From Andalucia godoyi And28 (taxonomy: Eukaryota > Protista > Jakobida): a stretch of DNA of 64,000 nt. Positions 6,597 to 63,752 of the stretch are shown in pieces; positions within the stretch are counted from its first letter, which is position 1; every line of letters starts with the position of its first letter. Under the pieces are notes generated by a model. That model ran no database searches and was not told the origin of the DNA. It saw nothing but the letters and a program-made list of their open reading frames with translations. Position numbers and translations under genes: made by a program. The stretch is from NCBI GenBank assembly GCA_009859145.1, contig VRVR01000048.1, positions 177,843 to 241,842 of the forward strand, in the 5' to 3' direction.

Positions 6597-6952
6597 ATTG
6601 TGACGCCGCCCTTCCGGATTTTGACGCCGCTCCGAAGCTCCTGCTGCACTTGTCCATCATGTTCCCGACTGCTGAAATTCCGAATTCGGCGCTAAAAAAG
6701 ATTTGCAAAAAAGAAAGGCGAGTTACACTGCTGTAGATCCTCTAAGATGATTCGCTTGTCGACAGGAAGTTGATGGGAGCGACAGATAGGGAGGGTTTTC
6801 CTTTCTAATGATTATTATCATGCTATCAACCCACGTATACACATATATGTGTGTATGTATAAAATTTCCAACTGTTGAAAAATTCAGAGCCATTAGCGTC
6901 TTCATCAAGATTGTTCGACTTGCCAAAAAATAAACTTGATTGTTGTTTGCTG

Positions 6953-19880: not shown

Positions 19881-20269
19881 GCATTTGCCGACTACCTTGA
19901 ATCCTTCCGTTGCCAGAAGAGGCGTGAGTGTTTTCTTTCGATCGGCAGTCAACACAGACATTTGAGAACGGCGGCGAGGAGTCAAACACTGATAACCCAA
20001 GAGCATGTCAGCAGAGATGAAGGGTCAAGGGAAGAGCTTGGCGGAATGCGGCGGGACTCGGCGGCATCAGGATCTGATGAGTGGCTGATGCAATCCAAGC
20101 ATCAAGCCTATAACAACCAATAAACCGAGTGTTGCTCCGAAGTCTCGAGTTTACTTTGTCCTCCGACTTTAGAGTGCAAGCGTTGCCGTTCAGAAGCTAC
20201 AAGGGGTACGTCCAAAGAGAAAGATAGATATATAGGTATATAGGTATATAGGTAGATAGACAGAGAAAG

Positions 20270-20315
<46 letters not shown>

Positions 20316-20316
<1 letters not shown>

Positions 20317-20807
20317 TGGTTGTCGTGTCTGCACCGCCGTTGCTGACACAGCGGAATGTACTGTCTGCGGTTGCCGGGGTATGCTTGTTCTTTTTGTTCT
20401 TGTACCACATGACAAGCTCTCCGACGCAGCGCGGACCTGTTAGGACATACGACGGCGGAGTCGACATTGTGCGGAGGAAGTCTCCGCCGACGAAACAAGA
20501 GCTGGGAAGAGCTGCGTGGATGCTGATGCACTCCATTGCTGGAAACTTCGATGACGAACCAACTGTAGAGCGAAGAGATGCGGCCCAGTCCTTCGTCAGA
20601 GGGCTCTTGGAGCTCTTTCCATGCTCGGTCTGCTCCGACGACTTCAAAGAGCGCATCCTCACCAAATACCCAATCGATGTTTCGTCAAGACGGGCGTTCT
20701 CTCTGTGGACGTGCAAAGTCCACAACGAAGTCAACGGCAAGCTCAACAAGCCCCTCGTGCCGTGCGAGCACTTTGACCGATTCTATCTCGGCATCGGGGA
20801 GCACTGA
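20316..20807 (+). CDS. Erv1/ALR-family FAD sulfhydryl oxidase with N-terminal signal anchor (Erv2-like)
   Basis: ELGRAAWMLMHSIA, FPCSVC (CxxC), WTCKVHNEVNGKLNKP; hydrophobic N-terminus. Confidence 0.92.
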
Positions 20808-21268
20808 AAAGCAGCACCCGTCCACCTCCTCCCCACAATGCCGAGACGCCCCTCTCTTGCCCGTGTCTTGTTCGCAGAAACTCCTTTTTTCTCTTATCTT
20901 TTCCTTCCTCGAGGCCGAGTGGCAGTTCCCACCTGCTGTATCGCCACGGTCCCTCCCCCAAGTGGCTTCCGTAATTAGCCGTTTGTTAAAGCGGAAAAGG
21001 AAAGGAAAAGGAGATGCGACAAAAGAAAATGTCCGGCAGTCCCAACCCTTGCCTAGGGTTTCCGCACATGCATGCCTACGTCCCCCTCTCTCTGTAAAAA
21101 AGCCAGGGGTAGGAAACACGACGATAATTCAAAAGGATTTTTCTCTCTTCTTCTGTTGTTTTCGATTTTATTTTTTATATTTTCTTTTTTCTTTGAGCAA
21201 AAGTGTTCTTTGATACGTACTTTTGCCGTCGGTGCTCTGCAGATCCTTTCCAAGATTGAATAGACGAA

Positions 21269-22406
21269 ATGAGCTCCAACATCAAGGCACTCCAGATTAC
21301 CGAAGATGATGCCCAGCGCATGCTTGCATCGCAGGTCCACCTTGGATCGAAGAACGTGAACCCGGACATGGCACGCTACATCTACTCTCGCCGCGGAGAT
21401 GGAGTGCACGTCTTCCACCTTGCGCGTACTTGGGAGAAGCTCTTGCTTGCCGCCCGCATCATTGTCGCCATCGAGAACCCCGCCGAAATCGCAGTTGTCT
21501 CGTCGCGTGCGTACGGCCAGCGTGCAATCCTGAAGTTCGCAGCACACACTGGTGCCACCGCCATCACCGGCCGCTTCACCCCGGGTACCTTCACGAATCA
21601 GATCCAGAAGCGATTCGTCGAGCCCCGTCTGCTGATCGTCACTGATCCTCGTACTGACCACCAGGTATGTTTTTCGCCTTTCGCCTTTCTCCTTTCTCCT
21701 TTCGGCTTTATGCCTTTTCTTTCTTTTTCTTCCAATCCCGCTTTTTTCTTCTTTTGATCGAGATGCAGCTCTTTTCAGGGAGAGAGATTGGGGGAAATAA
21801 TGTGATGCATCCAATTTTGCACGTTAGGGCGATTTCTCCATGAGCACTACACCAAGATCTCTGATTTGTTTCCCGTTCTCTCCTTTTGTTGCATTCATTT
21901 CTCTCGCGCTGTCTTTTCTGTTGACTGCTGAAGAAAAAAGTATTGAACATGTTTACTGATTCTTTTTTTTAAAAATCATTGTTTGCTTCTGTTCTTAGCC
22001 GATCACTGAAGCCTCGTACTGCAACATCCCGACCATTGCCTTTGCCGATGCAGACTCGCCATTGCGCTTTGTCGACGTTGCGATCCCGTGCAACAACAAG
22101 GGTAAGTTCTCCATTGCACTTGTCTACTGGCTCCTTGCCCGTGAGGTTCTCCGTCTCCGAGGACAGATCCTCCGCTCCGTTCCTTGGGACGTGAAGGTTG
22201 ATCTCTTCTTCTACCGTGATCCGGAGGAGGCCGAGGCACAGTCCAAGAAGGCCATTGAGGGCCAGACTGCCGAGGAACAGCTCGAGGAGGAGGCCGCCGC
22301 CGCCGCCGATGAGTGGGCAGACAAGGTTGGGGCCTCGGAATGGGCTGAGCCTGAGGGTGTTGCCGGAGAATCGTGGGCAAACGACGAGACTGCAGCCCAG
22401 AACTAA
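21269..22406 (+). CDS. RPSA: 40S ribosomal protein SA (uS2), 2 exons: 21269-21664 and 21999-22406
   Basis: [29 protein letters not shown]. Splicing joins DPRTDHQ to [14 protein letters not shown] in frame. Acidic C-tail. Confidence 0.98.
21665..21998 (+). other. Spliceosomal intron (334 bp)
   Basis: GTATGT donor, TACTGAT branch-like site near 21954, TTAG acceptor; removal restores the RPSA frame. Confidence 0.95.
21791..21874 (+). ncRNA. Intronic box C/D snoRNA, U24/SNORD24-like
   Basis: Box C GTGATGC (21802-21808), box D CTGA (21861-21864), terminal stem GGGAAATAA/TTGTTTCCC. The 11-nt guide CACCAAGATCT abutting box D is complementary to conserved LSU rRNA AGAUCUUGGUG. Confidence 0.85.
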
Positions 22407-22554
22407 AAGGTGTTCAGTCGTCTTTTTTTGTTTTTGTTTTGCGTATCTGTATTGCTCTTGGTGTAAAAGAAAAGGAAAAAAAAAAAAAAAGGAATGAGAA
22501 AAGAATTGCAAGATTGTAATTTCAGTTTCGCATCTTTTCTTCTTTCGGTTTATC

Positions 22555-41230: not shown

Positions 41231-41958
41231 CACGGGTTTTGCAGCTGCTTCTGTGCATGTTTCTATCCTATCCAAAGTGCGACTGCATGTTTTCCCCCCA
41301 ACTCCGTAAAAATCGGCAGCAAGTAAAACGACTGTACATACGGTTTAGCAAAAGCGCGAAATCTGTCGTAGTGGCCATCTCCTGCACGCCAGAGCATGAA
41401 TCATTACTGGGTCATCATCGGCTAAGCTGTCACCGAAGACAGATCCAAGCCATATGTTTCTTTGCTTTCCATTCATTTGGGGGTGAGCACCAACTCTTCA
41501 ATGTAGACTGCTCTGCATCAGAGGGTCGTCGCAACCACGAGTTTCTTGGTTCTCGGCATCTGCGGGCATGGCTGGTCTGAGTTTGTTGGGAAGATCCCTC
41601 ATTGGAGCCATGGGATGCTTTGTCTTTGATGAAATGTGCTGCTTGAGGGTTCGATTATAAGTAACCCAAACAAACAGAAAAAAATATAGAATAGAAACAA
41701 TAAACAGCGACGAATGAAAGAAATACTAGGCTTGACTACGGTAAGAAAATCGTATTTGTTTGATGTTTCAACGTGGATCCACAAAGCTGTCAGCCGTTTC
41801 TTTGATTTCCATTTTCTCGATTTCTTGTTAATAATTCTTTTTGTTGTTTTCTGTAAATGTTTCGATTTCGAACACAAACCGAGTGAGTGAGTGAGTGAGT
41901 GAGTGAGTGAGTGTGCGCGCTGCGAGTGATCTGGTCTTGCTTGTTGACGGTCAAAAGC

Positions 41959-49293: not shown

Positions 49294-52200
49294 TTACTTC
49301 ACCAAGAACGTTTGCATCTTTCCTTTCCCCTTGATATCGACGTCTCCGCGTTCTTCACAGTCGACTGAGGACCACACCAATTCATACGTACTACGTGTGA
49401 TCTGAATTCTTCCCGGGACTCCACTTGACTCCATCCGGGAAGCAATATTGACCGCATCGCCAATGCAATCATAGACAAATTTGCTTTTTCCAATGACGGC
49501 TCCGATGACTGGACCGGAGTTGACGCCGGCACGTATTTCTATGCTGGTAGAGTGCTGCAAGTTGTACTGCTTGACCATGTCGATCACGTCCTTTAAAAAG
49601 GAAATCATAGCAACAGCGTGGTCGTGTTTGCGTTCGAACAGACCGGCGGCCCCAAAAAAGCAATCTCCGATGAGCTTGATCTTTTCAATCTTGTGTTTTG
49701 TGCACAAAATATCGATGTTTGAGAAAATGTCACTCAGCATCTCAACCAAATCGCGAGGTGTCATGTGCGACGACAATTCCGTAAACTTGACAATGTCGAC
49801 AAAACAAAGACTGACGCATTGATACTGGTCATATATGGGATGTTCCCCGTCTTTTAGACGTGTGGCAATACTGCGGGGCAGTATGTTCAGCAACAAGTCG
49901 TCGGATCGTTGACGTTCTGTACGAAGCAACAGCTCAGTCTTCTCTCCCACAGTCAAATCACGCACAAATGCTGCGTAAAAAATCTCGTCCTTGATCTTAT
50001 ACGACGACAGCGATAGCTGGACAGGGAACGTCTGCTGATCTGGCAGCATTCCATCCGCACGCAAGGACAGCGTGCCTTTCTTCCGGACGGCTTCGTCCAG
50101 TGCTTTTGGAATGTCGTACGGGAAATTGTCCGAGAAGGAACGCAAGTTGCACACAAGAGTGTCAAAAGATCGCCCGATGACATTTCCGTTTTCCGAGCAT
50201 CTGAATATCTGATTGGCAGACGGAGAAGCGTGTTCAACAAATCCTTTCGAGTTCAGCTCCAATATGCCGTCCACTGAAGCCGCAAGAACCGACCGTGTCC
50301 TCAGCTCTGCTTCCTCCACGGCATCTTGGAACATGTTCTCACTCATTCGTGTTCCGTGAGTGCGCACAAAAGATTCCAATGCGGGAACCTTCTCGACAAC
50401 CGGAACAGGTATCATCGTTAGCATCTTCCGATACTGGTGAATTTCCTTCCACAAATGCGCTTGAAGGAACTGGGAGACGACAAGAGCTACCGCGATGACA
50501 CCCACACATACTCCGAATACTGGACCGATGGAACTCAATGCAAACGTTACTGTACTGGGAGTTTCGCTCACAAAAATCGCCTTCGACTGTGTCAGAAGAG
50601 GTCCCAAATAAAGAGACTCGATGTTGAGCAAATCGCGATAGGTTTGCAACTGGAATGTGAGTTGCGAATCCGGAAGCAGCAAAAGGACATTGGCCAAGTT
50701 TAGGTAGGCGGACATGATTCCATCAAGACCGAGACATGCTACGTTGAGCGTATCGTTGCATCGTCGGTCAAACAGCAGACTATCTTGTGCTGCAGAATGA
50801 CCAACGGATGGTGGTGTTTCAAACTTTGCTGATCCGTACTTGACAGCATCGTGAATTTCGGACAGCTGCTGAATTCCTGCACTCAGCTGAGGTCGCATGC
50901 TCGCCCTGCCTCCGTTCAGCAGCCGAGCATCATCCCGAATTAGTTCCGTTGCCAAGTAGTTGATTCTTTGCGAAAACGACCGTCGAGACCCTGCATAGTT
51001 GATCTGTGCAGACTTCGAGTATGATGAAAAACTTGCAGCCAAGCAAAAACCGCACATGACGATGATCAGCGAGCAAATCACAATGATGAATGTCAGGAAA
51101 ATTAAAGTCACTCGTGTGGTGGCAGACGTGGAAGAAGCCGCTGCACCACGTAACAGAATATCCGCACTAGAGCCCTTCTTGCCATTGCCCGCATGAATTG
51201 CAGTGCGACATTTTTGAACAATCGTGGAAACATCGGTCTTTGGAACTAGCAAAAACAGTCGCGAGATGGCTTTCCGCTCGCGAAGAATTGATCTCATGGC
51301 CCGAACGTAGAGTAGCAAAATCAACAAGATGGGCAGGCCAACCGCAAGCGCAGCAAGTACCCACAAGGTGATTCGATCTTGAGCAGCAGAGTCACGATAA
51401 TAAGCGACGTAAGCATAGACAAGACTCCACATACCCGTGAGCAAAGAATATGGACCGTTTTCAACAATAGAACGGAAATCTGTGTTGTTCCCGGTCCACA
51501 CGTTGCTGGAAAAGAATGTAGCGTTGAACGATGCCACATTCCTAATGCTTCGTACGTAGGAGTTGTACATTTCCCACCGCGATTGCATGACAACAGTGTG
51601 ATCTTGTGTTGAAGCGCTCCACAGATAGAAAGGAACGTCTCTCTTTTGCCATTCTGCTATCAACGAGTCGACGCCGAAAGTGCTCGCAAACAGAGAAGAA
51701 GCTGCTGTTTCGATATCGGTAGCAGTTTGTGTTAACTTTGTAATTGATGCGGAGAACGAGGTTCCCGTGTACCAGCCTTTGGCAACCGCTTCGCAAAGCG
51801 CAGTCATGTACGCCGCATTCACGGACGGCATACGGGTCCCTCCTGCATTGGCAACCATGTCCCCCTTATCCGACCGTATCGTCGATTTTCCAATGACATA
51901 CACTGTGATGCAAATCGCAAGCAGGCACAGCAAACTCACGAACATTGCAAACGAAATGTGATACAAGGATTTTGGCTTCTTGACGAGAAGGCTCTTCATG
52001 TCTTCCGCAATTTCGGCAGCAGAAGATGCCGAGTCCGGATCTGCATTCCCCTCAGATACCGAATCAAAGGCGACAGACCCCTTGCCTACGTCCATTTCCG
52101 TATCCATCGTCTCTGGCTCCACAAGCTCGCCAACCTGGACTCTTTTCTTCCGCGGCTTCATCCGAATCGCCTTCGGCGTAGAGGAGGAGCTGCGGAGACC

Positions 52201-54399
52201 GACAGCAGATGCAACATCACTAGCTCCATTGCTCACATCGGACTTCATCGATAGTGCATCCGACCCTTCAGCGCTGCCGCCAGTCTGCATGCGAGGCGCT
52301 GCGGGCAACGCAGAAAGTTCCAGCGCACCCGTTGCTTCTGACGCCATTTTGAACCGCGTGTCCCGCCTCTTCTTTCTCAGCATGTCTCCATTCTCACCTT
52401 CGTGGCGATCCGCCAGAGCAATGTAATATCGAGCTTCATCAAATGAAAGTGGATCGAGATCTCGGAGAAATTGAGCGTATGCACGAAGAACAGTCGGAGA
52501 AGACGGAAACCTTTGCAAAAGAGACCCAAGCAGATTTCGTGCAGCAATTTCCTCGCTTTCGATTCGGCTCACAGCAGCAGGCAACTGCTTGAGAGGAACA
52601 TTGTCGATCAGCAACAACTCCCAAAAAGCAGCAACCAGTTGGAGAGCTTGGATGCGATGGCGATTTGTCTTCTTCAAAAGAAGCATTAGTTCCGAACTTC
52701 CGCTTTGGTCCAGCGAGCGTCGTGCGTCATCCAAAGACGCCCAGAACACCTTGAATAACATCGAATTCTGTTCCAAACTGTCTGCGGTCGTTTTCAGTGC
52801 CTCTTGTACAGAGATCATCCCAAAAAGAGACGAGCGGACGGATGAGACAGTCAGAAAAAACTCGCATGCGCTCAGCTTCGTCCAGGGCGAGCATCCTTCT
52901 TGTTGCATGATTGTTTCGATGAGCGTCTTGCAATGTTCCAGAGTGTCAGACGCTCCTGACCGCTGTGAATGAATGCTACCGGAACTGATCCAGTAAACAA
53001 GTGCGGACATCTCGTACCACCGTAGAGGTATGAGTGGCCTGTGAATGTCCTCATCATTCGAAGCTGTAGACGTTGATGCACATTCAACATCGTCCGTTGG
53101 AGAAAACGACGGCGAGGAAGGTTGATTGGCCTCGGATGACTCACTGTTCCAAACCTTTGAGGAATACCGACTTCCTTCATTCGAGAGCGTGGAGGAAGCG
53201 CACTTCTTCTTCAAGTAATGAATTCGCTTTCGAAGCAACAGTTCTGACAATGCAACCAGAAATGATGCTGATAAGAGTATCATCCCAAATGAGTACGATG
53301 AGAAGTCAAACGAAGCAAGACTGGCGCTGATCAGGGCTGCTCGAGAGTATAGCGACACACGCTGACCCGCCCTCCACTTGTAAGGGCAGAAGTACAGGAC
53401 AACCATCCACACGGTCAGCGAGACGATGAGAGAAAATGTTGAGAAAAAGAATTGGTTGAAGGAAAAATACAGTATCGATCCGCACACAAACTTCTCCCCG
53501 ACGGTGACGGGCTGAATGAGATACGGAAGAGAAAGATCCAACAGAGAATATTCGAGCTTCGCGAACCCAAAAGAAACAATAAACGCCTCCGCGAATCTTA
53601 CTATCAGCATGCCGACGAAGAACGTTATGGCAAAGCAAATGTACAAGAGCTGAACGGAACTTACGCAGTGAATTGCGTTGCCAGTCTGTGCCAGGGTATT
53701 TCCAGCCCAGTCCATCAAGACGGAATCCAAGGGATTTGATGTCATGGTGCAATTCATCATTTGGAAAAACGCGAACATTGCAGGAAGCGTGATGATTGAG
53801 CGTCCACTTGAAACCAAGATGAAAAGAAACGAGAGCAAGGTTCGGGATATTGGGCTTCGATTCTGGTGCTGACGCTGAATCAGCAGCGTCAAGACCAGTT
53901 CAATGACTAAGAGACTTCCAAACAAGAACAAACGCACAATCATGTCGACGTAATTGTGATTCAGACTCTCCCCGAAAAACAGCAAGCGCGACAAGACCGT
54001 GAGCCAATTGGCAGCAGAAGAACCGGGAGAGGCATAGAGAAGAGCCAACGGCGCATTGATCAGCAATGCAAACATCTGCAAATACTCGATAATCCACAGG
54101 CACACAGAAAATGGAACAGCAAAAACATTTTTTCGTGCTACGTATGGCGTGGAGTTGAGCGTCCCGAAAGCGGCTCCAAACGTAATGAACACTTTCTGCC
54201 AGGGTGCAGAAAACTGAAGATGATCCATAAGGCTTCGTCCAGAGGAGGTGGACCACGACGTGAACGAATCGTGCCTCGACTGACCGTCTCCATCAGAAAT
54301 GTCTTCGCTGGTGTCCTCCACGTGAGCAGACTGCAAAGGCGTGGTTCGACGAAAATTAGGGAATCTGCCTCCAAACGTCGTGTCCGTCGTGTTGTGCAT
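49294..54399 (-). CDS. Multi-pass class III adenylate cyclase with two NarX/PilJ-like sensor domains and a PAS domain
   Basis: C-terminal CFVDIVKFT, KIKLIGDC, YDCIGDAVNIASRMES; PAS (ASVDGILELNSKG...FPVQLSLS); N-terminal TM bundle; two N-x-A-G-x-x-R motifs, each after a TM. Confidence 0.9.
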   Translation of the reverse strand: MHNTTDTTFGGRFPNFRRTTPLQSAHVEDTSEDISDGDGQSRHDSFTSWSTSSGRSLMDHLQFSAPWQKVFITFGAAFGTLNSTPYVARKNVFAVPFSVCLWIIEYLQMFALLINAPLALLYASPGSSAANWLTVLSRLLFFGESLNHNYVDMIVRLFLFGSLLVIELVLTLLIQRQHQNRSPISRTLLSFLFILVSSGRSIITLPAMFAFFQMMNCTMTSNPLDSVLMDWAGNTLAQTGNAIHCVSSVQLLYICFAITFFVGMLIVRFAEAFIVSFGFAKLEYSLLDLSLPYLIQPVTVGEKFVCGSILYFSFNQFFFSTFSLIVSLTVWMVVLYFCPYKWRAGQRVSLYSRAALISASLASFDFSSYSFGMILLSASFLVALSELLLRKRIHYLKKKCASSTLSNEGSRYSSKVWNSESSEANQPSSPSFSPTDDVECASTSTASNDEDIHRPLIPLRWYEMSALVYWISSGSIHSQRSGASDTLEHCKTLIETIMQQEGCSPWTKLSACEFFLTVSSVRSSLFGMISVQEALKTTADSLEQNSMLFKVFWASLDDARRSLDQSGSSELMLLLKKTNRHRIQALQLVAAFWELLLIDNVPLKQLPAAVSRIESEEIAARNLLGSLLQRFPSSPTVLRAYAQFLRDLDPLSFDEARYYIALADRHEGENGDMLRKKRRDTRFKMASEATGALELSALPAAPRMQTGGSAEGSDALSMKSDVSNGASDVASAVGLRSSSSTPKAIRMKPRKKRVQVGELVEPETMDTEMDVGKGSVAFDSVSEGNADPDSASSAAEIAEDMKSLLVKKPKSLYHISFAMFVSLLCLLAICITVYVIGKSTIRSDKGDMVANAGGTRMPSVNAAYMTALCEAVAKGWYTGTSFSASITKLTQTATDIETAASSLFASTFGVDSLIAEWQKRDVPFYLWSASTQDHTVVMQSRWEMYNSYVRSIRNVASFNATFFSSNVWTGNNTDFRSIVENGPYSLLTGMWSLVYAYVAYYRDSAAQDRITLWVLAALAVGLPILLILLLYVRAMRSILRERKAISRLFLLVPKTDVSTIVQKCRTAIHAGNGKKGSSADILLRGAAASSTSATTRVTLIFLTFIIVICSLIIVMCGFCLAASFSSYSKSAQINYAGSRRSFSQRINYLATELIRDDARLLNGGRASMRPQLSAGIQQLSEIHDAVKYGSAKFETPPSVGHSAAQDSLLFDRRCNDTLNVACLGLDGIMSAYLNLANVLLLLPDSQLTFQLQTYRDLLNIESLYLGPLLTQSKAIFVSETPSTVTFALSSIGPVFGVCVGVIAVALVVSQFLQAHLWKEIHQYRKMLTMIPVPVVEKVPALESFVRTHGTRMSENMFQDAVEEAELRTRSVLAASVDGILELNSKGFVEHASPSANQIFRCSENGNVIGRSFDTLVCNLRSFSDNFPYDIPKALDEAVRKKGTLSLRADGMLPDQQTFPVQLSLSSYKIKDEIFYAAFVRDLTVGEKTELLLRTERQRSDDLLLNILPRSIATRLKDGEHPIYDQYQCVSLCFVDIVKFTELSSHMTPRDLVEMLSDIFSNIDILCTKHKIEKIKLIGDCFFGAAGLFERKHDHAVAMISFLKDVIDMVKQYNLQHSTSIEIRAGVNSGPVIGAVIGKSKFVYDCIGDAVNIASRMESSGVPGRIQITRSTYELVWSSVDCEERGDVDIKGKGKMQTFLVK

Positions 54400-56173
54400 G
54401 TTAGGGAGGCTTCGCTGAGTAAACAATCCGAACGAAACACGAGGTTCGGCAAAAAATGAAAGAAGAAAGAATTCAACGAACAAAGGAAACAACGAGGCTT
54501 TTTTGGGCGACGAAATCGCACTCCCCACCACCGCTCATCATCACTCCGGCTCCTGCTCTTTCGCATCCCCTTGGTTCGAGGAAAGTGATCGCAAGCACTG
54601 GTATCGTGTGTGTGCAAAGCTGGCATCCAAAGGCGATCAGAGGAGAAGCAGGGGCGGCCCCGCATGATCAGACGCGGCAACTAGAGCCACCGTAATTGGA
54701 ATCAAATTCCTTTTTTGCACCCAAACCTCCGCTTCCGCTTTTGTCCGCCGGTGCACAGTCGGAGACGGATGGAACGTTTCAAAGCCTGTTTGCTCGCAAA
54801 GTCGGATGGGTTGATGGTTCGCAATTCCGGGAGCCGCACTGCAGGCGGAGTGGCCAGTTCCCGCTTCACAGCTTCCGTTTTATCTTTGAACGGTGTGCTC
54901 ATTCTTGCCTTTTCTGCTGGAAAGAAATGTATGTTTTTGAGGCCAAACGTTGACTTTTCGGAGTCTTTGGGGAAAATGCTTGATGCTAGATGTACGGTAT
55001 TTTACTTCGCAAGGCCTGTGACCGCGTCATTTCTGAATGAGAATGTCCTATAGCGGTTGCTTTGTTGTGGAACAACTGTAATGGCATCGGCTTGAGTGAT
55101 CTCCCTTTTTTGAACCGGTGACAACGGCCTTCTATTCTGAGCAAGTACACATTGTTGCAGCTTTAAACAATGGTGAGCGTCCTGAACTAGAGACGCACGA
55201 ACAACCAGTTCTACTGTCGCCTGGAGGGTTTTGCCATCTCACTGCTCTGCATCCGATGTCCTCATACATAGAGAACATTCAGCGCGCTTCTTGATGTTAT
55301 TCACACTATGGCATCGGGTTCGAAGTTCATTGGCCGTCTACACGACGTAGGAACTGGCTCATCGTGCTCGGTTGGATTGCTGAAAGTCTCTTGCAGCACA
55401 TGTTTCCAGACTTGGACTATCCAACTATGCGTCATGTCAAAGATCTATTTTGCCATTTTCACAGCAACTTCATCAAGAACCGGAGAAACGCGCAATTGCC
55501 TATGCGGTTCCTTTGTAGTCATCGAAGCAATGCCGCCTCGTGCACACTTCTTTTCTGCCTTTCTCAGTTTGCGGTTCTGTCATTTCCAGGTGGTGCTGTG
55601 GAGGGCCTTTTGCAGTCGGCTGCTTACTCCTCAATTCATGTTCAAGCAAAGCGATCGTGGGAAGCTCTTCGAAAAGAATACATGATCAAATGTCTACGAC
55701 CTTTGACAGAGCGTTGATAACGTCTTGTCTGTTACCGGATGCTGCTCTTGACGTAGTGAACGTGATTGTAGATCGCGCGGTGGAAGCAGGCTTGTTTTCT
55801 CTTGTCACGCAGCTTGCTACACGTATTGTCATTAATGTACAGCGCATTAGAACATGCATCACTGTCATTTCCTTGGTGAGCGAGCAGTTTTCTAACCATC
55901 AAAGCGATGACAGAGCTTTGCAAATTAAGATCACAAGAAATGAAAAACGAGCGCAAGGACGAGAGCAAACGAGACGAGCGACAGGAACGAAACCTAGTTT
56001 TACAATAATCGAAAGTCGACAAATGACGAGCCGCGGCAGTGGTCGGGCCAGCCGCTGCCTGGGCTCGCTTTTCTTTCCTTCTCTTACCAGTTGAGAAAAG
56101 GTAAATAAAGACGCGTGCTTAACGCAAGTCACTGTTCTTTCGTTGTTTTACTGGCTGATAAAAGCTACTGCGG

Positions 56174-59166
56174 ATGACAATCTGTTTATTGTCTATCCCT
56201 GTGTGTCTCTTACAAAGAATTTGTTCATTTTCTTTGTCGTGCGAAATAGCAAGTCTTGCATGTTCACACAAAGCAATTCTTCAGCACATTCAGAAGTTTG
56301 CAGAAGACGGGGAATTGAAATGGTTTTATAGGTTTATGGACGATGTGCGTCATTGTGAATTTCGCTCCTATGTTAATCAAAGCTTTCAACGGGATTTAAT
56401 CAAGTGCGGTTGTTTCCGAGACTTTCACATTGCTTCAGTTGGTGCAGTGATTAGTGGCATGTACTTGGAACGTGATCAACTTCCCCTTTCTGTTCATAGA
56501 CCGGAAAATGATAACGATGAGCAAAGGTTTGCTTCTGAAAACAGCGAGTTCGACAGCTTTTTGGCAGACGAATCAGAAGCCGAACCTGCAAATGACGGTT
56601 TCTACGATGCTCAGCACGAAGTTGTCGGAGATAATCGCTTTCGCGTTCAGTTAGACAATGTTCATCATTCTGACAGGGAAGCTTCCTCAATTAGACTTGC
56701 TTCGCCGTTCCCTTTTTTGGACTTCGAAATGACCTTTGATGCCTTGGTAGCTCTCTGCCAATCAAGAAGGACGGCGTTTCCTACAGTCAAAGATGCTTCC
56801 TCGTGTCCTTCCTTGCCTTCTGTTTCTGATTACTTTACTGTGGGAGTATCGCTATCCCGGCAACTCTCTGCAGATTCGACTTTTCTAAGCAATGTGAGTG
56901 TCCAGTTTATTAACGCAGAGCTGGTATCTTGTCCTTTGCATCTGTTACAAACTGAATTCAGCCAATTTATGCACGGATCTCAAGATGTCCGTTTGTCATT
57001 GTTATTGGGCTCAATTAGACGCCATGTCGACTTCATGAGATCATTATTCAAGTATTATGATCCACTTGGAAGGTTGCCAATTATTCGAATTTCTTGGACT
57101 GCCCTTCCTGTGCTCAAAATGATCGCATTATCAGAAACCGTCGAAAAGCAGCACCCGATACTATGGCATGTTTGTGTTCCTTTAGATAACTTCATTTCAT
57201 CTTTGAGCGTTGATGCTACAGAAGAAATGCTGTCCATTTTGGATGCTGTTTATGAACAATGCAAGACAAGTCGATTTGATTTTGAGATAATTGGTGATGC
57301 GAATTCTGAATTCATGTCCGTTGAATTGGAACGAACGAATTTGTGGAGTATTCAGTCACATCCAGCGTTTCGTCGATGGATTTTGTTTTCTGATAATGAT
57401 TTTCCCTCCTCAATCCTTGAACAACATTCCAAAAAGAATGTTTTGCATAGGAGATTAGATTTAGACTGCATTGATAGTCTTCTTGCTGTTGTTTCCGCTG
57501 AAATACGGTTGTTCAAATCCTTGCATTTGACAAAGTTTAATCCCGATTTTCTGAAGACTTTATGTTTGTCATCAATCGCCGAAGACATCACTGAAATATC
57601 CGATTTTCCCGTTTTAGAGACTTTACTGATACGACGACTATCGAACCGTCTTTCTTTGCGTGTCAATGGCTGTCGCCGACTACATGTTGCACATTGTGTC
57701 GAAGGTCTTTTGTGCTTTAGCAAAGTTCCTCGGCCATTCCTAAAACATGCTGGCTTTGTGGATTGTGAAGCCCTTTCTCAGAATTTGCTTGCCACTGTTG
57801 AAACTCTCGCATTGTATTTAGATTCATCAAGCCCAGATGAATTGAGGCTGCACGCGTTTTGCCCTAAGCTTACCTGCTTACGAGTTATCAGTCGAGACTT
57901 TTTGGGCGTCATCTGGGTTTTGCCACATGTTATAGTTATCAATTCTGCGGTTCCATCAGTAGACGTCAGACGCTGTCCGCTTCCTACTTGGAATGTAGAT
58001 CTGCTGTCGACTCGACTGCGTTTCTCAGAGGTGGACAAATCATCTAGGCATGGCGTGCGCGTTCGGTGTCTACAAGACGAATCTCGCTGCATTTCCGTTA
58101 CATTACCTTTCATGCGATCTCCAGAGTTGAGCCATCCTTGTTGCTTTATTTCTGTGGATTGTTCGTTGTTGCCAGATGCCGCAGTTTTGACGATTGAACA
58201 AGGTGACGAGAAACCCATTTCAGATGTAATCCGTCGTCGAATTGCGCTTGGCTGCACTCTTGATCGGTTCATCTTGAGCGTGGCACACTGTCGTCCCCGA
58301 GCGATATGGATTGATGCGGCATGCGATCTAATTGTGAATTCCTCTGTTCTCGAAGTCGTAGAGGCCATTTATTTGTCTAATTCCGATGCTCGCATCATTG
58401 TCGAAGGTCGCGGCGATTTGCTAACTTGTGGTATTTGCCTTGAACTTCCTAATTTGCGGTTTGTTTCTCAGGTGGGGAGATCGAAGCATATGTGTATTCT
58501 GAGCACGGATCAGCAAACGGTTGCGGTGCATTGTTCGCGTCGTTCAACGAAAGTCAACGTACTTGCAAGTAATGGCGATGCGCATTTGCAACAGATTTAT
58601 GAAGCTTACTCCTCCATGGGAATATCATTAGATATGTTGGATGAAGACTCATTGCGGTTAGCATCGCAAGAACATCTCAACAGGTATGTACAGTTACTAT
58701 CGGAACGTCAAGAGAAAAGGAACGACATTGTTTCTTCTACTCCAATATGTGTCTCTGACGTTGCGGCGCATCCGGCTTTCGCTGTCGTTGAAAGAATGCC
58801 GCAAAATGGACACAGTCCATTTTCTGTCGAAATGCCTGCGGAATGGAATGGCACTTTGCGATTTTCTTTTCTTTTGGAACCAAAAGAGGAATTCTTTGAC
58901 AAAGGCGGTGGTCGAGATACTCCGGTCGAGGATGCTGATATCGATGAAGAGACCTTGTCCTGCCCCTCTGATCCTTCAACAAGTGAAGTGGAGGATTTGG
59001 AAAATCCATCATTATGGAAGAAAGACGAAAGATTCAAAAGCGGGGATAGTGATTTTCAGTTCAAGGATAATGATGGTAATGATGATAGTGATGACGATGT
59101 CGATGACGACGGCGATGGCGAAGATGAAAGTGACAACGAAAATAGTGATGATGATGATGATGATAG

Positions 59167-59202
<36 letters not shown>

Positions 59203-59392
59203 CGAAATGAAACATCCGATGCAGAGTTTGCGGCCTTCGAAGCGCCCCCGTTTGATCTCGAATTCCGATGATGAAGATGATGATGAAGAAAACGAGAACG
59301 GAAATAGTGAAGACATCGCGTCTTTCGCCAAACGATTGTCCATCACTGCTTTTTCTCATCCAGCCCTTCTTGACAGAGATGATTCCGACTGA
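56174..59392 (+). CDS. Hypothetical 1072-aa protein, LRR-like central region, Asp-rich tail, putative NLS
   Basis: ATG-initiated uninterrupted ORF; LETLLI, VETLAL and LTCLRV-type periodicity; poly-D tract; PSKRPRL. Confidence 0.75.
59095..59202 (+). repeat. (GAT)n coding poly-Asp tract
   Basis: Directly visible. Confidence 0.9.
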
Positions 59393-59691
59393 AGTTCATT
59401 AAGTCGAACATTATAGATATTACATGATATGGCTCTGATATGCATCTGATGCATGAGGTCTCCTAACTTCTGAATTGGTGATGTCAACTTCTCTTCTGTA
59501 TCATGCTGGATGTGTACAGCTGTGCGATATCATCAAAGATCTCAGTGCATTGCATGTGTTTTCAATCAGATCACGAGAAACTGTGTGCGGGATTAGTTTA
59601 AACGATACAATACAGTTGTTTTACGATTTGCAACACAAAATCTGCACGCGTAAGGGAACGCGTAAATTCCAGACGACGATCTGAAACAGTT

Positions 59692-61404
59692 TCATCCAAA
59701 TAACCCTCCATAAATGCCACTAATAAAAGGAAAGAAGTTTAGCCGTAGCAGCTTCGTAACACTATTTTCGCAAGCCAAACTCTCCAGCAACTTCCATGGA
59801 CGACGAAACAGTCGGAGTTCTCCATTCCACCGACGTGAACCTACATGAATCCGAGAAGGCAGGACATATTGAGGTAGCGGTGATCGTCGAAAATTCAAAT
59901 AAGCAGCCAAGGACATGCTGTCATCCGGAATGACTCCTGGGAAATCAAGACTTTCACTTTCTTCTGCTCGATGACGGAAAAAGGGGATCCAGTCATCCAA
60001 CTCCGGATGACTTTGGATAGCATTTGCATCAATGCGTAGATGCTCAGACCATAGCAAGGAACAAAATTCAACCACGGCGTTCTTGTCATTTACAAGGACG
60101 GCTATCTCGCTGTCACATTGACCTGACATAGACCGAAAATTGATATTGGCGCTTCCGATAATGGCGGATACACCATCGACGACCATCACCTTAGAATGGA
60201 CATACACGGATTCGAACCAACAACCGCCATGATCATATTCAAGTTTTAGAACATAAAAACACTGAACATAGTCCTCGAATGAGAGACGTCCCGAGAAACG
60301 TTCTTGAAACAAAGAACGAAATCGTTTGAAAGTGCTGCATTCAAAAGCGAGAACTCCTTGAAATGACTTTGAATCAATATCACTTTCCATGTGAAGCGGA
60401 AGTACAATAACTACTTTCAAACAATCCTGTCCATGAGAGACAAGATACTCCATTCTGTCCATAATCGAATCTACTATACCATGACTATGACCATAATCGT
60501 CAGCAAAAAACTGATTCTCAATATATATGAATTTGTAAGCGTTTGAAATCGAATGTAAGTAAGCGCGCAGAAGAGAAGTGTCTGCAACTTTTCGTCCAGA
60601 AGCCCATGTTGGAATAGAGTGCACAAAGGACAGACATGTTGCAGGTATCTCTCGCCACGTTGCCGTAAAATGAAGTCCTTCATCAGAGATTGGATGAACG
60701 AATGGCAAATATGGGCGAAGACCTACAAACCGCATAAAATTCAACATCTCCACTAAAACTTGTGAAGATGGCGCTCCAAATACGCCGGCGTGAACATCGT
60801 GCCATGGCATTCTAGGAAAAAGACCAGAAGAAAACCGATGGAACCAAGCATTCCTGATTTCTTTAGTATCCCAGTCAAACGAACGGAGAAGTGCGTGTTC
60901 GTTGTTATCCCATCGTCCAAAAGCCAGATCAAGGCCTCCGACAAACACCAAACTCTCATCTACAATAATAATTTTGCGGTGATGACTTACTAAAGCGTTT
61001 TTTCCTGCTATAAAAGGAATCCGTCCAACAAAAGTTTCAGGAACGAACCTGGCCCAAGTACGAATACCAGAGTTAGGATGCAGACAATAATCAAATCTTT
61101 CGTGGTAGGCTTTGCGCAACCCCTCAAGAAAAGGTGTCAACTTGTCTACGAAAGTGCCAGAAGTGCCTAATGCATCATGCCATAAAACCATTCGGATTTG
61201 GATGCTTCTTGGGGGACTCAAAGCCTCTTGAAGCAGACCAAAAAGAGAATCTCGTGCAGCTCTGTCAAGAATCACTTCAAAATTTAAAGTCCAACCACAT
61301 ATGAAAACGCTATTCTTCGCATTGCGGATGGCATTTGCAATGTCCAAGAAAGCTCCTTCACCGTCTACGTATGCTTTAAAGCGCGCAACTGGATGCTCAT
61401 TCAT
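59692..61404 (-). CDS. Phospholipase D (two HKD motifs; PLD1/SPO14-type core without PX, PH or C2)
   Basis: AYVDGEGAF...FICGW, SHHRKIIIVD, RMPWHDVH, IYIENQFF, YVHSKVMVVD...IGSANIN..S...DSE. Confidence 0.93.
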   Translation of the reverse strand: MNEHPVARFKAYVDGEGAFLDIANAIRNAKNSVFICGWTLNFEVILDRAARDSLFGLLQEALSPPRSIQIRMVLWHDALGTSGTFVDKLTPFLEGLRKAYHERFDYCLHPNSGIRTWARFVPETFVGRIPFIAGKNALVSHHRKIIIVDESLVFVGGLDLAFGRWDNNEHALLRSFDWDTKEIRNAWFHRFSSGLFPRMPWHDVHAGVFGAPSSQVLVEMLNFMRFVGLRPYLPFVHPISDEGLHFTATWREIPATCLSFVHSIPTWASGRKVADTSLLRAYLHSISNAYKFIYIENQFFADDYGHSHGIVDSIMDRMEYLVSHGQDCLKVVIVLPLHMESDIDSKSFQGVLAFECSTFKRFRSLFQERFSGRLSFEDYVQCFYVLKLEYDHGGCWFESVYVHSKVMVVDGVSAIIGSANINFRSMSGQCDSEIAVLVNDKNAVVEFCSLLWSEHLRIDANAIQSHPELDDWIPFFRHRAEESESLDFPGVIPDDSMSLAAYLNFRRSPLPQYVLPSRIHVGSRRWNGELRLFRRPWKLLESLACENSVTKLLRLNFFPFISGIYGGLFG

Positions 61405-61639
61405 TGTAAAATAACAACAGTTTTGAAATGATGAAGCAGGATGAAGAAAAGCGGGTGAACGAATGAATTCCGGCTTGAAATGGTGGAAAACTTGAAGGTC
61501 GGTACTCGTCCCGAGGTTGAGGCATTCGTTAGCGTAACGAACCGCCCTAAAAATCCCCGGTCGAACAACTCCCAGCTACAAAAAAACCTCACGGATCCTG
61601 CTTCACGTTTGGCAATTTTTTTTCTTTTGTGAATATACG

Positions 61640-62398
61640 ATGATTTCTGTGCAAAAGGAGACGAGAATATCAATGTCGATTGATGATCGTGCAGCCAAGC
61701 GATCCCGCGGACCCTCTGCGGACCCGGATCCGCTGCTAACGTTATTTTTGAAGAAGGATACAAAAGGTATCGATTCTTATCTATCGTCATTGAAACGTGA
61801 GACTGAAGAACGGCGTTATGCGATTGTTGATTATGTGAATGAAAACTTCGCCGCGGATGATACTCACACCAAATCAAGATCCGCGTTGTTTATTTTGCAA
61901 GACTTGAACCACGTGTTTTCAGATCGGAAATCAACTGGTTTATACGAATATCTGATGGAGAGCAGCGAAAGGATAGTTGAGTTAGAAAACTTGCCATTAA
62001 GAGAGTTGGAAAGTCTACGTGACAGAGTCTGTGGAGACGCGAGTGTTAAAGACGATGTCCAAGACCTTCGTATACTGCTCGAAACAGTGATCGATCACAT
62101 TCGCAGTTCGAAGAATTCCAAAACTGTTCCTGTTTCGTCAGAGTCAAAAGGTTCTGAAAGCTTGAAGTCTCGATGTGCCGTGATGCTATCCTCTAAGGGA
62201 AAGTGCGCCAGGGTCCTAATGCAGGTTAAGAACGATATGAAGTTTAGGGAGAGTTTGGCAAGGGACGAAGACTGTTGTAGGTACTTAAGAATGTCTTTGC
62301 AAAGAGTGGAGTCATTGTGGAAAGACGAACTTGCGCAGGAATTGAGATCTCTCATCGCAGTTTCAAGTGTGAGCACTCGGCAGAAGGAAGTGCAGTAG
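61640..62398 (+). CDS. Hypothetical alpha-helical protein
   Basis: 252-aa ATG ORF divergent from PLD (235-bp gap); AAKRSRG basic patch. Confidence 0.6.
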   Translation: MISVQKETRISMSIDDRAAKRSRGPSADPDPLLTLFLKKDTKGIDSYLSSLKRETEERRYAIVDYVNENFAADDTHTKSRSALFILQDLNHVFSDRKSTGLYEYLMESSERIVELENLPLRELESLRDRVCGDASVKDDVQDLRILLETVIDHIRSSKNSKTVPVSSESKGSESLKSRCAVMLSSKGKCARVLMQVKNDMKFRESLARDEDCCRYLRMSLQRVESLWKDELAQELRSLIAVSSVSTRQKEVQ

Positions 62399-62492
62399 TA
62401 AGTGAATTTACTTGTGAAGCGATCGAATAATCGGATGCAAAAATCTGTGGACCGTGCGAATCAGTTGATAGTTTAATCATCTCGGCGCCAAT

Positions 62493-62954
62493 TCATCCTT
62501 TATTTGCCGGCTTTCGCAATAAATCAGTTACAATCCTGGATTTTTGAGAGGCGAACATGGAAATATCGCGTTTGAGATCATCATACAAATGCGCAGGCTG
62601 CCGCTGGTTGCTCTTTAGTACTACTGCATGTTCACACAAGCTGCTGCACCGTAAACCAGACCTGCGTCTGTCATCACTCCCATGGCCATCCATCACCCCT
62701 GAGAACTTTTTCATTAGCTTGTCCCTCTCCAGAGGAACATACTCATAAGAGATGTTGCTCGAGCATTTATCACGTGCTGTTTCGAAGATTGCATCCAATC
62801 TCGCGATACCCAGCAGAACTGCATACGTCTCACTACTTTTGTCATGTCGAATCATTCTCGAAGCCAGATCCTCATATTTCGTCGAGCAAGGCCACGTAGT
62901 ATTACCGACCAACATATTGCAGATGTCGGAGAGCCGCTCGTCCGTACACTCCAT
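62493..62954 (-). CDS. Hypothetical protein
   Basis: 153-aa ATG ORF convergent with the previous ORF; no motif recognised. Confidence 0.4.
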   Translation of the reverse strand: MECTDERLSDICNMLVGNTTWPCSTKYEDLASRMIRHDKSSETYAVLLGIARLDAIFETARDKCSSNISYEYVPLERDKLMKKFSGVMDGHGSDDRRRSGLRCSSLCEHAVVLKSNQRQPAHLYDDLKRDISMFASQKSRIVTDLLRKPANKG

Positions 62955-63752
62955 ACTTCGCCCGGCGCCGCTTTCATACAGAACAGTGTTCTAACAAGGT
63001 GTTCTATCATTAAATACCTTATAAAGACACGCCTTTTTGAGCTTCCTCGTCAGAAATGCTTGGCTCCGTGGTGGGCTGCTGCCAGTCGACGTCGGGAACT
63101 CTTTTTGTGTGCATTAAATATAATATTATAATATGAAGAATCCAGGTTGTTTCATAGTGTTTTTTGAGACCCTCGATAGGGTTTATCGCAGATGTATTAA
63201 TGTTTGCAGTGATAGTACCAGTGTCGATCGTCGACCGCTAGGTCGCTAGACTACGGTCGATTGGCATAAAACATTTTGTCAATCAGCTATTACACTCCAC
63301 CACACTCTTTTCACTCCGTCAACACTAGATGCATTGCAGTTGCATGGCGTGCATCGTCTTTCCATCCCACTGCATAAGTAAACAATAAACACACACGTTC
63401 ATTCATGCTGAATTGATTCATTCACGTACTGCAGCCCATCTAACCACTGTAGTGGACACCCGACGCAGACACACCGACTCCGTGCCGATCGGCACGCAGA
63501 AATCGACCGACTGCTTGGCAGACTGCCATGGTCCAGGGTGCCGGTCGGCACATTCATTTTTCTGGCCCTCCTTCTCCTCTCGCATCTCACTCTCTCCCAA
63601 CGACCATGAAAACCCGCGTCATGCGCTTGTCTTCTTCCACGTCTGCTGGCTTAGCATAAAATCACTTTATTCGCATCTCATTCTCCCTTCCTCTTTTTTA
63701 TTCCCAGAAACCATTAACTCCCATACATTCCAGCCACCCAGTGCCACACACC

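What the first reader, a model, noticed from the sequence alone, without database searches (positions are those of the whole stretch)
54690..63330. Candidate acquired gene island: PLD plus orphan, putatively nuclear proteins
Seen: immediately upstream of the cyclase the sequence becomes AT-richer (sampled 19-20 G+C per 60 nt versus 34 in a host gene). Host-type microsatellite spacers vanish, and four tightly packed ORFs appear in alternating orientation (1072-aa LRR-like/acidic, PLD, 252-aa, 153-aa) after ~1.4 kb of broken ORFs. Only PLD is recognisable, and two orphans carry KR-rich NLS-like patches. Inference: cargo of a large mobile element or endogenous virus, or a lineage-specific module pairing a lipid-signalling enzyme with nuclear effectors. 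I found no TIR, TSD, integrase, transposase or capsid gene, so mobility is unproven.
Basis: partly seen in the sequence, partly recalled or inferred. Interest (0 to 1): 0.75.

Follow-up and report, generated by a model that had tools for sequence, protein, structure and literature searches.

The report
Low-GC3 gene pair with divergent phospholipase D
A 7-kb stretch of the Andalucia godoyi (jakobid protist) nuclear genome holds an intact but very divergent phospholipase D and three proteins without recognisable relatives. Their codon usage is unlike the neighbouring genes, but nothing shows a virus or a mobile element, so it is most likely ordinary resident DNA.

Summary
The window comes from Andalucia godoyi, a compact, mostly intronless jakobid genome (PMC7050145). 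The shift sits almost wholly at third codon positions. GC3 is 0.36-0.39 in orf1072 and PLD and 0.48-0.51 in orf252 and orf153, against 0.49-0.71 in 20 host genes. Codon-usage correlation with host genes is 0.04-0.10, against 0.32-0.90.

The dinucleotide signature stays near-host (delta* 52; host pieces 31-47; unrelated genomes 90-169). It shares the host's extreme TpA depletion. Once GC3 is set aside, codon preferences follow the host.

Tight packing and alternating orientation are normal for this genome. I found no transposase, integrase, capsid or other viral domain, no terminal repeats and no relatives in viral contigs. The PLD is a complete PX/PH-less HKD enzyme on a very long branch with no identifiable donor. 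The labels 'LRR-like' and 'nuclear' are not supported. orf252 is a called gene of the published set.

Best reading: resident, lineage-specific, weakly codon-adapted genes. An old acquisition cannot be excluded. Interest is low.

The parts
49294..54399 (-). Left host neighbour: multi-pass membrane protein with TmcB-type TPR, PAS and a class III cyclase domain (1701 aa from the annotated ATG).
   Evidence: Pfam Guanylate_cyc 3e-51, TPR_TmcB and PAS_9. Its own database entry is P0121 (eukprot). GC3 is 0.54 and RSCU correlation with the other host genes is 0.77.
54400..56173 (.). Long ORF-poor spacer between the divergently oriented cyclase and orf1072. It holds + strand ORFs of 112-184 aa of unknown status. 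GC falls gradually across it.
   Evidence: ORF list. No Pfam hit for the ORFs or for the six frames with X at stops. GC is 0.485. Four ATG-start variants are not in the protein collection.
56174..59392 (+). orf1072: a 1072-aa protein without detectable relatives. The C-terminal ~160 residues (about 58910-59389) are D/E-rich and include a coding GAT repeat at 59146-59202. There is one KRPR patch.
   Evidence: ORF. No hit among 1.84 billion representative proteins, none in Pfam at E up to 10 and none in the PDB. No LRR motif and no internal repeat. AlphaFold2 single-sequence pLDDT 34.7. GC3 0.39, T3 0.39, RSCU correlation with host 0.05 and with the PLD 0.72.
59393..59691 (.). 299-bp spacer between the 3' ends of the convergent pair orf1072 and PLD. 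It has no microsatellite.
   Evidence: GC 0.395.
59692..61404 (-). Phospholipase D, 570 aa: a catalytic core only, with no PX or PH domain. HKD motif 1 is H142-K144-D149 (60958-60981). HKD motif 2 is H403-K405-D410 (60175-60198).
   Evidence: Pfam PLDc and PLDc_2. PLD1 6u8z at 3.1e-46 over residues 8-444, and PLD2. All 49 invariant columns of a 35-sequence family alignment are kept, as far as residue 536. Identity to every group is 26-31%. It has the longest terminal branch in an NJ tree, 1.0 against a median of 0.085. GC3 0.36 and RSCU correlation with host 0.04.
61640..62398 (+). orf252: a predicted all-helical protein with no Pfam or PDB relative. The published gene model starts at the second ATG (61673; 241 aa).
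   Evidence: ORF. The exact sequence 61673-62398 is in the collection as P0156, source eukprot. Pfam and PDB give nothing. AlphaFold2 pLDDT 43.9, helices only. GC3 0.48.
62493..62954 (-). orf153: a 153-aa ORF without relatives. It is the least certain of the four as a real gene.
   Evidence: ORF. Pfam gives nothing and the best PDB hit has E = 0.79. It scores best of the six frames but has a low host codon score of -0.05. GC3 0.51. Two start variants are not in the collection.
62955..63752 (.). Right-hand spacer. GC rises from 0.42 to above 0.53 at about 63.2-63.4 kb.
   Evidence: Six frames have no Pfam hit above chance.
63753..63998 (+). Start of the next host-type gene, which runs off the window.
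   Evidence: Open frame from an ATG with GC3 0.95 and host codon score +0.15. No Pfam hit on the 82-aa fragment.

Best explanation
This is resident nuclear DNA of Andalucia godoyi. It carries a convergent pair of weakly codon-adapted genes: the orphan acidic-tailed orf1072 and a divergent PX/PH-less HKD phospholipase D. Two small lineage-specific ORFs, orf252 and orf153, follow.

The AT shift is a third-codon-position effect. Synonymous sites sit at the composition of the host's own non-coding DNA instead of showing the G/C-ending bias of the neighbouring genes. That pattern is expected for genes under little codon selection. They may be weakly or conditionally expressed, or young and fast-evolving, and they have lived under this genome's mutational regime for a long time.

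Shown:
- The PLD is structurally complete, with both HxKxxxxD motifs and every family-invariant residue.
- The dinucleotide signature is near-host.
- The gene layout is host-typical.

Inferred:
- The PLD makes phosphatidic acid from a phosphatidylcholine-type lipid, using the two-histidine mechanism of its family.
- The four genes are neighbours, not a functional module.
- Low expression explains the codon usage.
For: Organism and its genome habits; PMC7050145.

GC1 and GC2 of the island ORFs lie in the host range, and only GC3 drops. Host spacers have GC 0.36-0.50, which brackets the island's GC of 0.43-0.47.

Dinucleotide signature: rho(TA) is 0.41 in the host and 0.51 in the island. CC/GG is 0.80 versus 0.79, and GA/TC is 1.21 versus 1.27. 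Delta* is 52 for the island, 31-47 for host pieces of the same size, and 90-169 for eight unrelated contigs.

Within G/C-ending and within A/T-ending codons of four-fold families, the island follows the host's preferences (r = 0.80 and 0.58).

GC3 forms a continuum through host genes: THADA 0.53, o22555 0.52, o18471 0.49, orf153 0.51, orf252 0.48.

Other points:
- orf252 is a called gene of the published set.
- The PLD keeps all 49 invariant positions and shows no donor affinity.
- No mobility or viral feature was found.
- The window has no assembly gap.
Against: The break in codon usage is sharp. All four island ORFs correlate with host RSCU at 0.04-0.10, while 20 host genes reach 0.32-0.90. 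That group includes host genes without Pfam hits and long genes such as THADA.

orf1072 and the PLD share a distinctive T3-rich usage (r = 0.72). It most resembles the resident hAT transposase (r = 0.57-0.62).

Delta* is slightly above the host range. GC3 of the two large genes (0.36-0.39) is at the low end of the spacer GC range.

Three of the four ORFs have no Pfam hit, against 3 of about 21 host ORFs.

PLD and orf1072 appear to be missing from the published protein set. Expression was not measured.
Confidence: 0.55

Rival explanations
1. Acquired DNA. At least the orf1072-PLD core (56.2-61.4 kb) arrived by horizontal transfer, as cargo of a mobile element or as a remnant of an integrated virus. 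It has since lost its mobility genes and ends, and has partly taken on the host's mutational signature.
For: Codon usage is unlike all 20 host genes but is shared between orf1072 and the PLD, and it resembles the hAT transposase. Tetranucleotide distance is the highest in the window. Delta* is just above the host range. The spacers lack the host-type microsatellites. The proteins are orphans, and the PLD sits on the longest branch of the tree. The genome paper mentions transposon- and virus-like sequences in scaffolds left out of the assembly. PLD and orf1072 appear absent from the published protein set.
Against: The ORFs and the six-frame translations of both spacers contain no transposase, integrase, capsid, packaging ATPase or polymerase. 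No terminal inverted or direct repeats flank the stretch. None of the four proteins has a relative in IMG/VR contigs. The dinucleotide signature is near-host and far from unrelated genomes. The left border is gradual. The PLD is of the cellular PLD1/2 type and is equidistant from animals, plants and metagenomic sequences. The neighbouring host cyclase is just as devoid of close relatives, so orphan status mostly reflects an unsampled lineage.
Confidence: 0.3
2. A decaying or partly non-functional stretch. The ORF-poor 1.8 kb and the small ORFs are relics, orf153 (and perhaps orf252) is not a real gene, and the low GC3 reflects relaxed selection.
For: The spacer at 54400-56173 has + strand ORFs of 112-184 aa with island-like codon scores and no homology. 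orf153 is short, and chance ORFs of 150-200 aa occur elsewhere in the window. GC3 is at the non-coding level.
Against: An uninterrupted 1072-codon frame and a 570-codon PLD that keeps every invariant residue, including both catalytic motifs, are not expected without purifying selection. orf252 is a published gene model.
Confidence: 0.1
3. An assembly chimera or contaminant joined to a host contig.
For: The draft assembly was built from 454 and Illumina reads. Composition shifts over about 7 kb.
Against: The window has no gap and no N. The dinucleotide signature is near-host, with the same extreme TpA depletion. Host-type genes lie on both sides. orf252 is in the organism's published protein set. 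The PLD is eukaryotic, whereas the culture's other organisms are bacteria.
Confidence: 0.03

Closest known systems
Eukaryotic HKD phospholipase D of the PLD1/PLD2/plant PLD-zeta type
   Same: Both have two HxKxxxxD motifs and all family-invariant residues, including the segment after the second motif. The match to solved PLD1 and PLD2 catalytic domains is highly significant.
   Different: This PLD has no PX or PH domain, and the ORF starts at the catalytic core (570 aa). It is only 26-31% identical to any relative and sits on the longest branch of the tree. Short PX/PH-less relatives of 630-690 aa do exist on eukaryote-like metagenomic contigs.
Endogenous viral elements of protists (giant-virus insertions, virophage-like or Polinton-like elements)
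   Same: Both are AT-shifted blocks of orphan genes with atypical codon usage inside a compact host genome.
   Different: This stretch has no capsid, packaging ATPase, polymerase, primase or integrase domain, and no relatives in viral contigs. It spans only about 7 kb and four ORFs, and its dinucleotide signature is near-host.
Cargo-carrying DNA transposons; the hAT element at 1.2-7 kb of this window serves as a local yardstick
   Same: GC is lower and codon usage is less host-like than in core genes. Island RSCU correlates with the hAT transposase at 0.64.
   Different: The hAT stretch has a recognisable transposase and a paralogue at 90% identity or more elsewhere in the genome. The island has no transposase, no terminal repeats and no detected second copy. 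Copy number in the whole genome could not be tested.
Lineage-specific (orphan) genes with weak codon adaptation in compact protist genomes
   Same: The proteins have no detectable relatives. GC3 is at the non-coding level, the layout is host-typical and the dinucleotide signature is host-like.
   Different: The gap in codon usage from every other gene of the window is unusually sharp. One of the genes is not an orphan but a member of an ancient enzyme family.

Membership tests
HKD phospholipase D superfamily, PLD1/2/zeta type | Two HxKxxxxD catalytic motifs | tested here: met
   H142-K144-D149 and H403-K405-D410 lie in invariant alignment columns. Pfam PLDc matches twice, with a whole-protein E-value of 6.7e-13.
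HKD phospholipase D superfamily, PLD1/2/zeta type | Full catalytic-domain similarity to solved PLD1 and PLD2, including conserved positions after the second motif | tested here: met
   6u8z at 3.1e-46 over residues 8-444. Invariant G417, S418, A419, N420, N422, G528 and P536 are all kept.
HKD phospholipase D superfamily, PLD1/2/zeta type | N-terminal PX and PH domains | tested here: not met
   Pfam finds no PX or PH domain. The ORF begins at the catalytic core, and the 235 bp upstream leads into orf252 on the other strand. It is therefore a PX/PH-less form, not a canonical PLD1/2.
HKD phospholipase D superfamily, PLD1/2/zeta type | Phospholipid-hydrolysing activity | not testable with these tools
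   Inferred from intact motifs only.
Endogenous virus (giant virus, virophage-like or Polinton-like) | Hallmark genes: major capsid protein, packaging ATPase, DNA polymerase or primase, integrase | tested here: not met
   Pfam found none in the four ORFs, the overlapping alternative ORFs, or the six frames of both spacers. The only hits were chance-level, E = 0.05-0.09 and far below cut-off.
Endogenous virus (giant virus, virophage-like or Polinton-like) | Relatives of the genes on viral contigs | tested here: not met
   IMG/VR scans with all four proteins gave no confirmed relative. The scan finds close relatives only.
DNA transposon with cargo | Transposase or integrase within the element | tested here: not met
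   As a contrast, the hAT transposase at 1837-4101 was detected readily.
DNA transposon with cargo | Terminal inverted repeats and target-site duplication at the borders | tested here: not met
   No repeat pair has one arm at 54.4-56.2 kb and the other at 62.9-63.7 kb. Only chance-level matches of 16-21 nt were found.
DNA transposon with cargo | More than one copy in the genome | not testable with these tools
There is no second copy within the 64-kb window.
Horizontally acquired genomic island | Composition and codon usage that are atypical for the host | tested here: met
   GC3 is 0.36-0.51 against 0.49-0.71. RSCU correlation is 0.04-0.10 against 0.32-0.90. Tetranucleotide distance is the highest in the window.
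Horizontally acquired genomic island | Foreign oligonucleotide signature independent of GC | tested here: not met
   Delta* is 52, against 31-47 for host pieces and 90-169 for unrelated contigs. The host's TpA and CC/GG depletion is shared. Codon preferences conditioned on GC3 follow the host.
Horizontally acquired genomic island | Phylogenetic affinity of the genes to a donor lineage | tested here: inconclusive
   The PLD is equidistant (Kimura distance 1.56-1.57) from fish, plant and metagenomic PLDs. Its NJ sister is an ankyrin-PLD on a Tara Oceans scaffold (77 of 100 bootstraps), but the PLD is on a very long branch. The orphans give no signal.
Horizontally acquired genomic island | Absence from the same site in relatives (empty site) | not testable with these tools
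   No close relative of even the host cyclase exists in the databases: the best is 34% identity over 12% of its length.
   No LRR family in Pfam at E up to 10. No LxxLxLxx[NC]x[LIVF] match and no internal repeat by self-BLAST. The AlphaFold2 model is not usable, with pLDDT 34.7.
   There is only one four-residue basic patch in each protein: KRPR in orf1072 and KRSR in orf252. Such patches are common by chance, and localisation cannot be tested here.

The most novel reading that the evidence does not exclude
The orf1072-PLD core is the eroded remnant of DNA that a jakobid acquired from a virus or another eukaryote of a still unsampled lineage. It would have brought in a stand-alone PLD catalytic core and has since been partly ameliorated. 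That would make it one of the first documented foreign insertions in a jakobid nuclear genome.
Probability: 0.25. Interest if true: 0.4.

Novelty: new member of a known kind. Interest (0 to 1): 0.2.

Why it matters
The finding matters only modestly. Jakobids are studied for their ancestral-looking mitochondria, and their nuclear genomes are barely explored. The stretch points to a complete, very divergent phospholipase D and a 1072-aa ORF that appear to be missing from the published Andalucia godoyi protein set. That omission would affect surveys of lipid-signalling genes across eukaryotes.

It also shows that this genome contains a class of genes whose codon usage is decoupled from the strong host bias; here these are the hAT transposase, a multicopy gene and this pair. 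A genome-wide survey of that class would show whether it marks mobile or foreign DNA or simply silent genes. As it stands, nothing here calls for a new kind of element.

Tried and rejected
Homology searches:
- PLD in the 5.8-billion-protein collection gave only 26-36% relatives and no self entry.
- orf1072 residues 1-930 against 1.84 billion representatives gave nothing.
- A concatenate of orf1072, orf252 and orf153 returned nothing. It also missed orf252's own entry, P0156, which was found later. I therefore discard as evidence, and the two small ORFs have not had a valid large-database search.

Structure and family searches:
- PDB sequence searches for the three orphans gave nothing.
- AlphaFold2 without an alignment gave pLDDT 34.7 for orf1072 and 43.9 for orf252. 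These models are too poor for fold search, so none was run.
- Pfam on six-frame translations of both spacers gave nothing.
- Rfam and tRNA scans of the window gave nothing.

Related loci:
- The four viral-contig scans were negative.
- The metagenome scan with the PLD returned only PLDs of about 30% identity.
- Contexts of the most similar short PLDs look eukaryotic, with no viral hallmark.
- Synteny in relatives was impossible. The look-up of encoding contigs holds no record of this genome, and the cyclase has no close relative.

Ideas rejected:
- Annotation-time repeat masking does not explain the missing gene models, because orf252 and the hAT transposase are annotated.
- A PX/PH-encoding upstream exon of the PLD is unlikely. 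The adjacent 158-aa ORF overlaps orf252 and has no Pfam hit and a poor codon score.
- The hAT stretch, used as a positive control for terminal repeats, gave no clear TIR by the simple scan. A negative TIR result therefore has limited power.

Full report
SOURCE AND SETTING. Exact look-ups placed 13 ORFs of the window in a protein collection with source 'eukprot'. Two of them share 90% clusters with named proteins of Andalucia godoyi: ANDGO_05145 'Putative AC transposase' and ANDGO_06212. The window is therefore part of a 241,842-bp contig of this jakobid.

The genome paper (PMC7050145) gives the following background:
- The nuclear genome is about 20 Mb and compact, and most genes lack introns.
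- In 47 sampled close gene pairs the spacers were 44-691 nt (mean 217), and 38 pairs were in opposite orientation.
- The annotation pipeline ran repeat discovery first.
- Several subtelomeric scaffolds of 'transposon/viral-like sequences' were left out of the assembly.

The rest of the window encodes ordinary eukaryotic genes. These include pirin, a hAT transposase, a cadherin-like/WD40 protein, DRC4/GAS8, DNAAF5, EMC7, Snf7, a class I tRNA synthetase, a VWA protein, Rsm22, THADA and a membrane cyclase.

THE OBSERVATION. The AT shift is real. The island averages 26.1 G+C per 60 nt and the host averages 30.7. Seven consecutive 1-kb windows are below 0.47 GC, whereas the longest such run in 47 host windows is two (Mann-Whitney p = 3e-5). 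Tetranucleotide distance from the host mean peaks there.

Lines with 20 or fewer G+C are as rare in the island (4.4%) as in the host (4.1%).

No spacer after 43230 holds a microsatellite. However, 8 of 18 host spacers lack one too, and the absence starts before THADA, not at the island.

Alternating orientation and tight packing are normal here. In this window 12 of 20 adjacent host pairs are opposite, and seven genes alternate strictly at 32.8-40.6 kb.

The 'broken ORFs' are a 1774-bp spacer between the divergently oriented cyclase and orf1072. It carries + strand ORFs of 112-184 aa, with no Pfam match in any frame.

THE GENES.

The PLD (570 aa) matches solved PLD1 and PLD2 catalytic domains (3e-46). 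In an alignment with 34 relatives it keeps all 49 invariant positions, including both HxKxxxxD motifs and conserved residues up to position 536. It is therefore a complete enzyme under selection. It lacks PX and PH domains. Identity is 26-31% to animals, plants and metagenomic proteins alike. In a neighbour-joining tree it has by far the longest terminal branch (1.0; median 0.085). Its nearest neighbour is an ankyrin-PLD on a Tara Oceans scaffold (77 of 100 bootstraps), yet it is equally distant from everything. No donor can be named.

orf1072 has no relative among 1.84 billion representative proteins, in Pfam or in the PDB. It has no LRR motif and no internal repeat. Its last ~160 residues are an acidic tail.

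orf252 is predicted helical and orf153 is short. Neither has a Pfam or PDB relative.

The 'NLS-like' patches are one four-residue basic run in each of orf1072 and orf252.

COMPOSITION IN DETAIL. GC1 and GC2 of the island ORFs are host-like, and only GC3 falls:

| Genes | GC3 |
|---|---|
| PLD | 0.36 |
| orf1072 | 0.39 |
| hAT transposase | 0.45 |
| orf252 | 0.48 |
| orf153 | 0.51 |
| 20 host genes | 0.49-0.71 |
| Gene starting at 63753 | 0.95 |

Relative synonymous codon usage correlates with the other host genes at 0.32-0.90 for each of 20 host genes. For the four island ORFs the figure is only 0.04-0.10. orf1072 and the PLD correlate with each other at 0.72, and with the hAT transposase at 0.57 and 0.62.

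Three observations limit it:
- The island's GC equals that of the host's own spacers, 0.36-0.50.
- The GC-independent dinucleotide signature is near-host. The values are rho(TA) 0.51 versus 0.41, CC/GG 0.79 versus 0.80 and GA/TC 1.27 versus 1.21. Delta* is 52, against 31-47 for host pieces of the same size and 90-169 for eight unrelated contigs.
- Within G/C-ending and within A/T-ending codons of four-fold families, the island follows the host's preferences (r = 0.80 and 0.58).

The anomaly is thus the absence of the host's GC3 bias, plus some T3 excess. It is not a foreign signature.

TESTS FOR MOBILITY OR A VIRUS. All of these were negative:
- No transposase, integrase, capsid, ATPase or polymerase domain in any ORF or in the six frames of either spacer.
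- No inverted or direct repeats bracketing the stretch.
- No second copy in the window.
- No relatives of any of the four proteins in IMG/VR contigs.

The left border is gradual (0.52 to 0.42 over 55-56.2 kb). The right border is sharper, at 63.2-63.4 kb. The window contains no assembly gap.

ANNOTATION STATUS, WITH A CAVEAT. orf252 read from its second ATG is an entry of the collection (P0156, eukprot), so it is a published gene model. The stretch was therefore not masked as a whole.

For the PLD, two start variants are not in the collection, and a normal homology search returned no self entry. For orf1072, two start variants are absent and the exhaustive search found nothing. Both seem to be missing from the published protein set.

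This is not certain. One search, the concatenated query, failed to return P0156 although that entry exists. I treat as void. As a result, orf252 and orf153 have had no valid large-database search.

INTERPRETATION. The host cyclase next door also has no relative closer than 34% identity over 12% of its length. 'Orphan' here mostly reflects an unsampled lineage.

The most economical reading (confidence 0.55) is resident, lineage-specific, weakly codon-adapted genes. Their synonymous sites have drifted to the genome's non-coding composition. One of them is a divergent but intact stand-alone PLD.

The main rival (0.30) is an old acquisition, reduced to cargo and partly ameliorated. It is favoured by the sharp codon-usage break, by the usage shared between orf1072 and the PLD, and by the likeness to the hAT transposase.

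Decay of a formerly coding stretch (0.10) is unlikely for the two long ORFs. An assembly artefact (0.03) is unlikely for all of it.

No evidence connects the PLD functionally with its neighbours.

COMPARISON AND VERDICT. The PLD is a member of the HKD PLD family but not a canonical PX/PH PLD1/2. The stretch fails every testable defining feature of endogenous viruses and of cargo transposons. For an acquired island it meets only the 'atypical composition' criterion.

Novelty: a new, divergent member of a known enzyme family, plus lineage-specific ORFs.

Interest: low (0.2). The practical value is a probable gap in the published annotation and a pointer to a class of codon-unadapted genes worth a genome-wide look.

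Noticed in passing
window 1183-6952: This is a second lower-GC stretch (27 G+C per 60 nt). It carries a hAT-family transposase at 1837-4101 (+), with Pfam hAT dimerisation and DUF659 domains. The transposase has a paralogue at 90% identity or more elsewhere in the genome (ANDGO_05145, 'Putative AC transposase'). A 2.85-kb ORF-poor tail follows. A simple scan found no clear terminal inverted repeats.
   Followed up: partly
window 18471-19190 (-): This 239-aa ORF has no Pfam hit. It shares a 90% cluster with a second A. godoyi protein (ANDGO_06212), so it is multicopy. Its codon usage is the least host-like of the host genes (r = 0.32, GC3 0.49).
   Followed up: partly
window 16159-16282 and 41720-41798: Two blocks of about 43 and 37 nt (81-84% identical) are shared, in inverted orientation, by two intergenic spacers. 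One spacer lies upstream of GAS8 and the other upstream of Rsm22. They may be a small dispersed repeat or a common regulatory element.
   Followed up: partly
window 49294-54399 (-): The cyclase has an unusual architecture: many membrane spans, TmcB-type TPR, PAS and a class III cyclase domain. Its closest database relatives match only the cyclase domain (34% over 12% of its length) or the PAS-plus-cyclase part (28% over 35%).
   Followed up: partly
window 19191-22554: This 3.4-kb stretch (GC 0.50) lies between two called genes. It contains only mutually overlapping ORFs of 200-250 aa on both strands, plus two microsatellites. The one ORF tested has no Pfam hit. It may be a gene with introns or an unrecognised element.
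   Followed up: no
window 63753-63998 (+), runs off the end: This is the start of a gene with GC3 0.95, the most extreme codon bias in the window. It lies directly after the low-GC3 stretch.
   Followed up: partly
window 61401-61404: The PLD start codon overlaps the stop of an upstream 158-aa ORF on the same strand (ATGA). That ORF overlaps orf252 on the other strand, has no Pfam hit and has a poor codon score, so it is probably spurious.
   Followed up: partly
tool behaviour: A plain-letter concatenated query to the search for homologous proteins returned no hit at E up to 0.1. Yet one of its three parts (orf252) has an identical 241-aa entry (P0156) in the same collection. Negative results from such queries should not be trusted.
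   Followed up: partly
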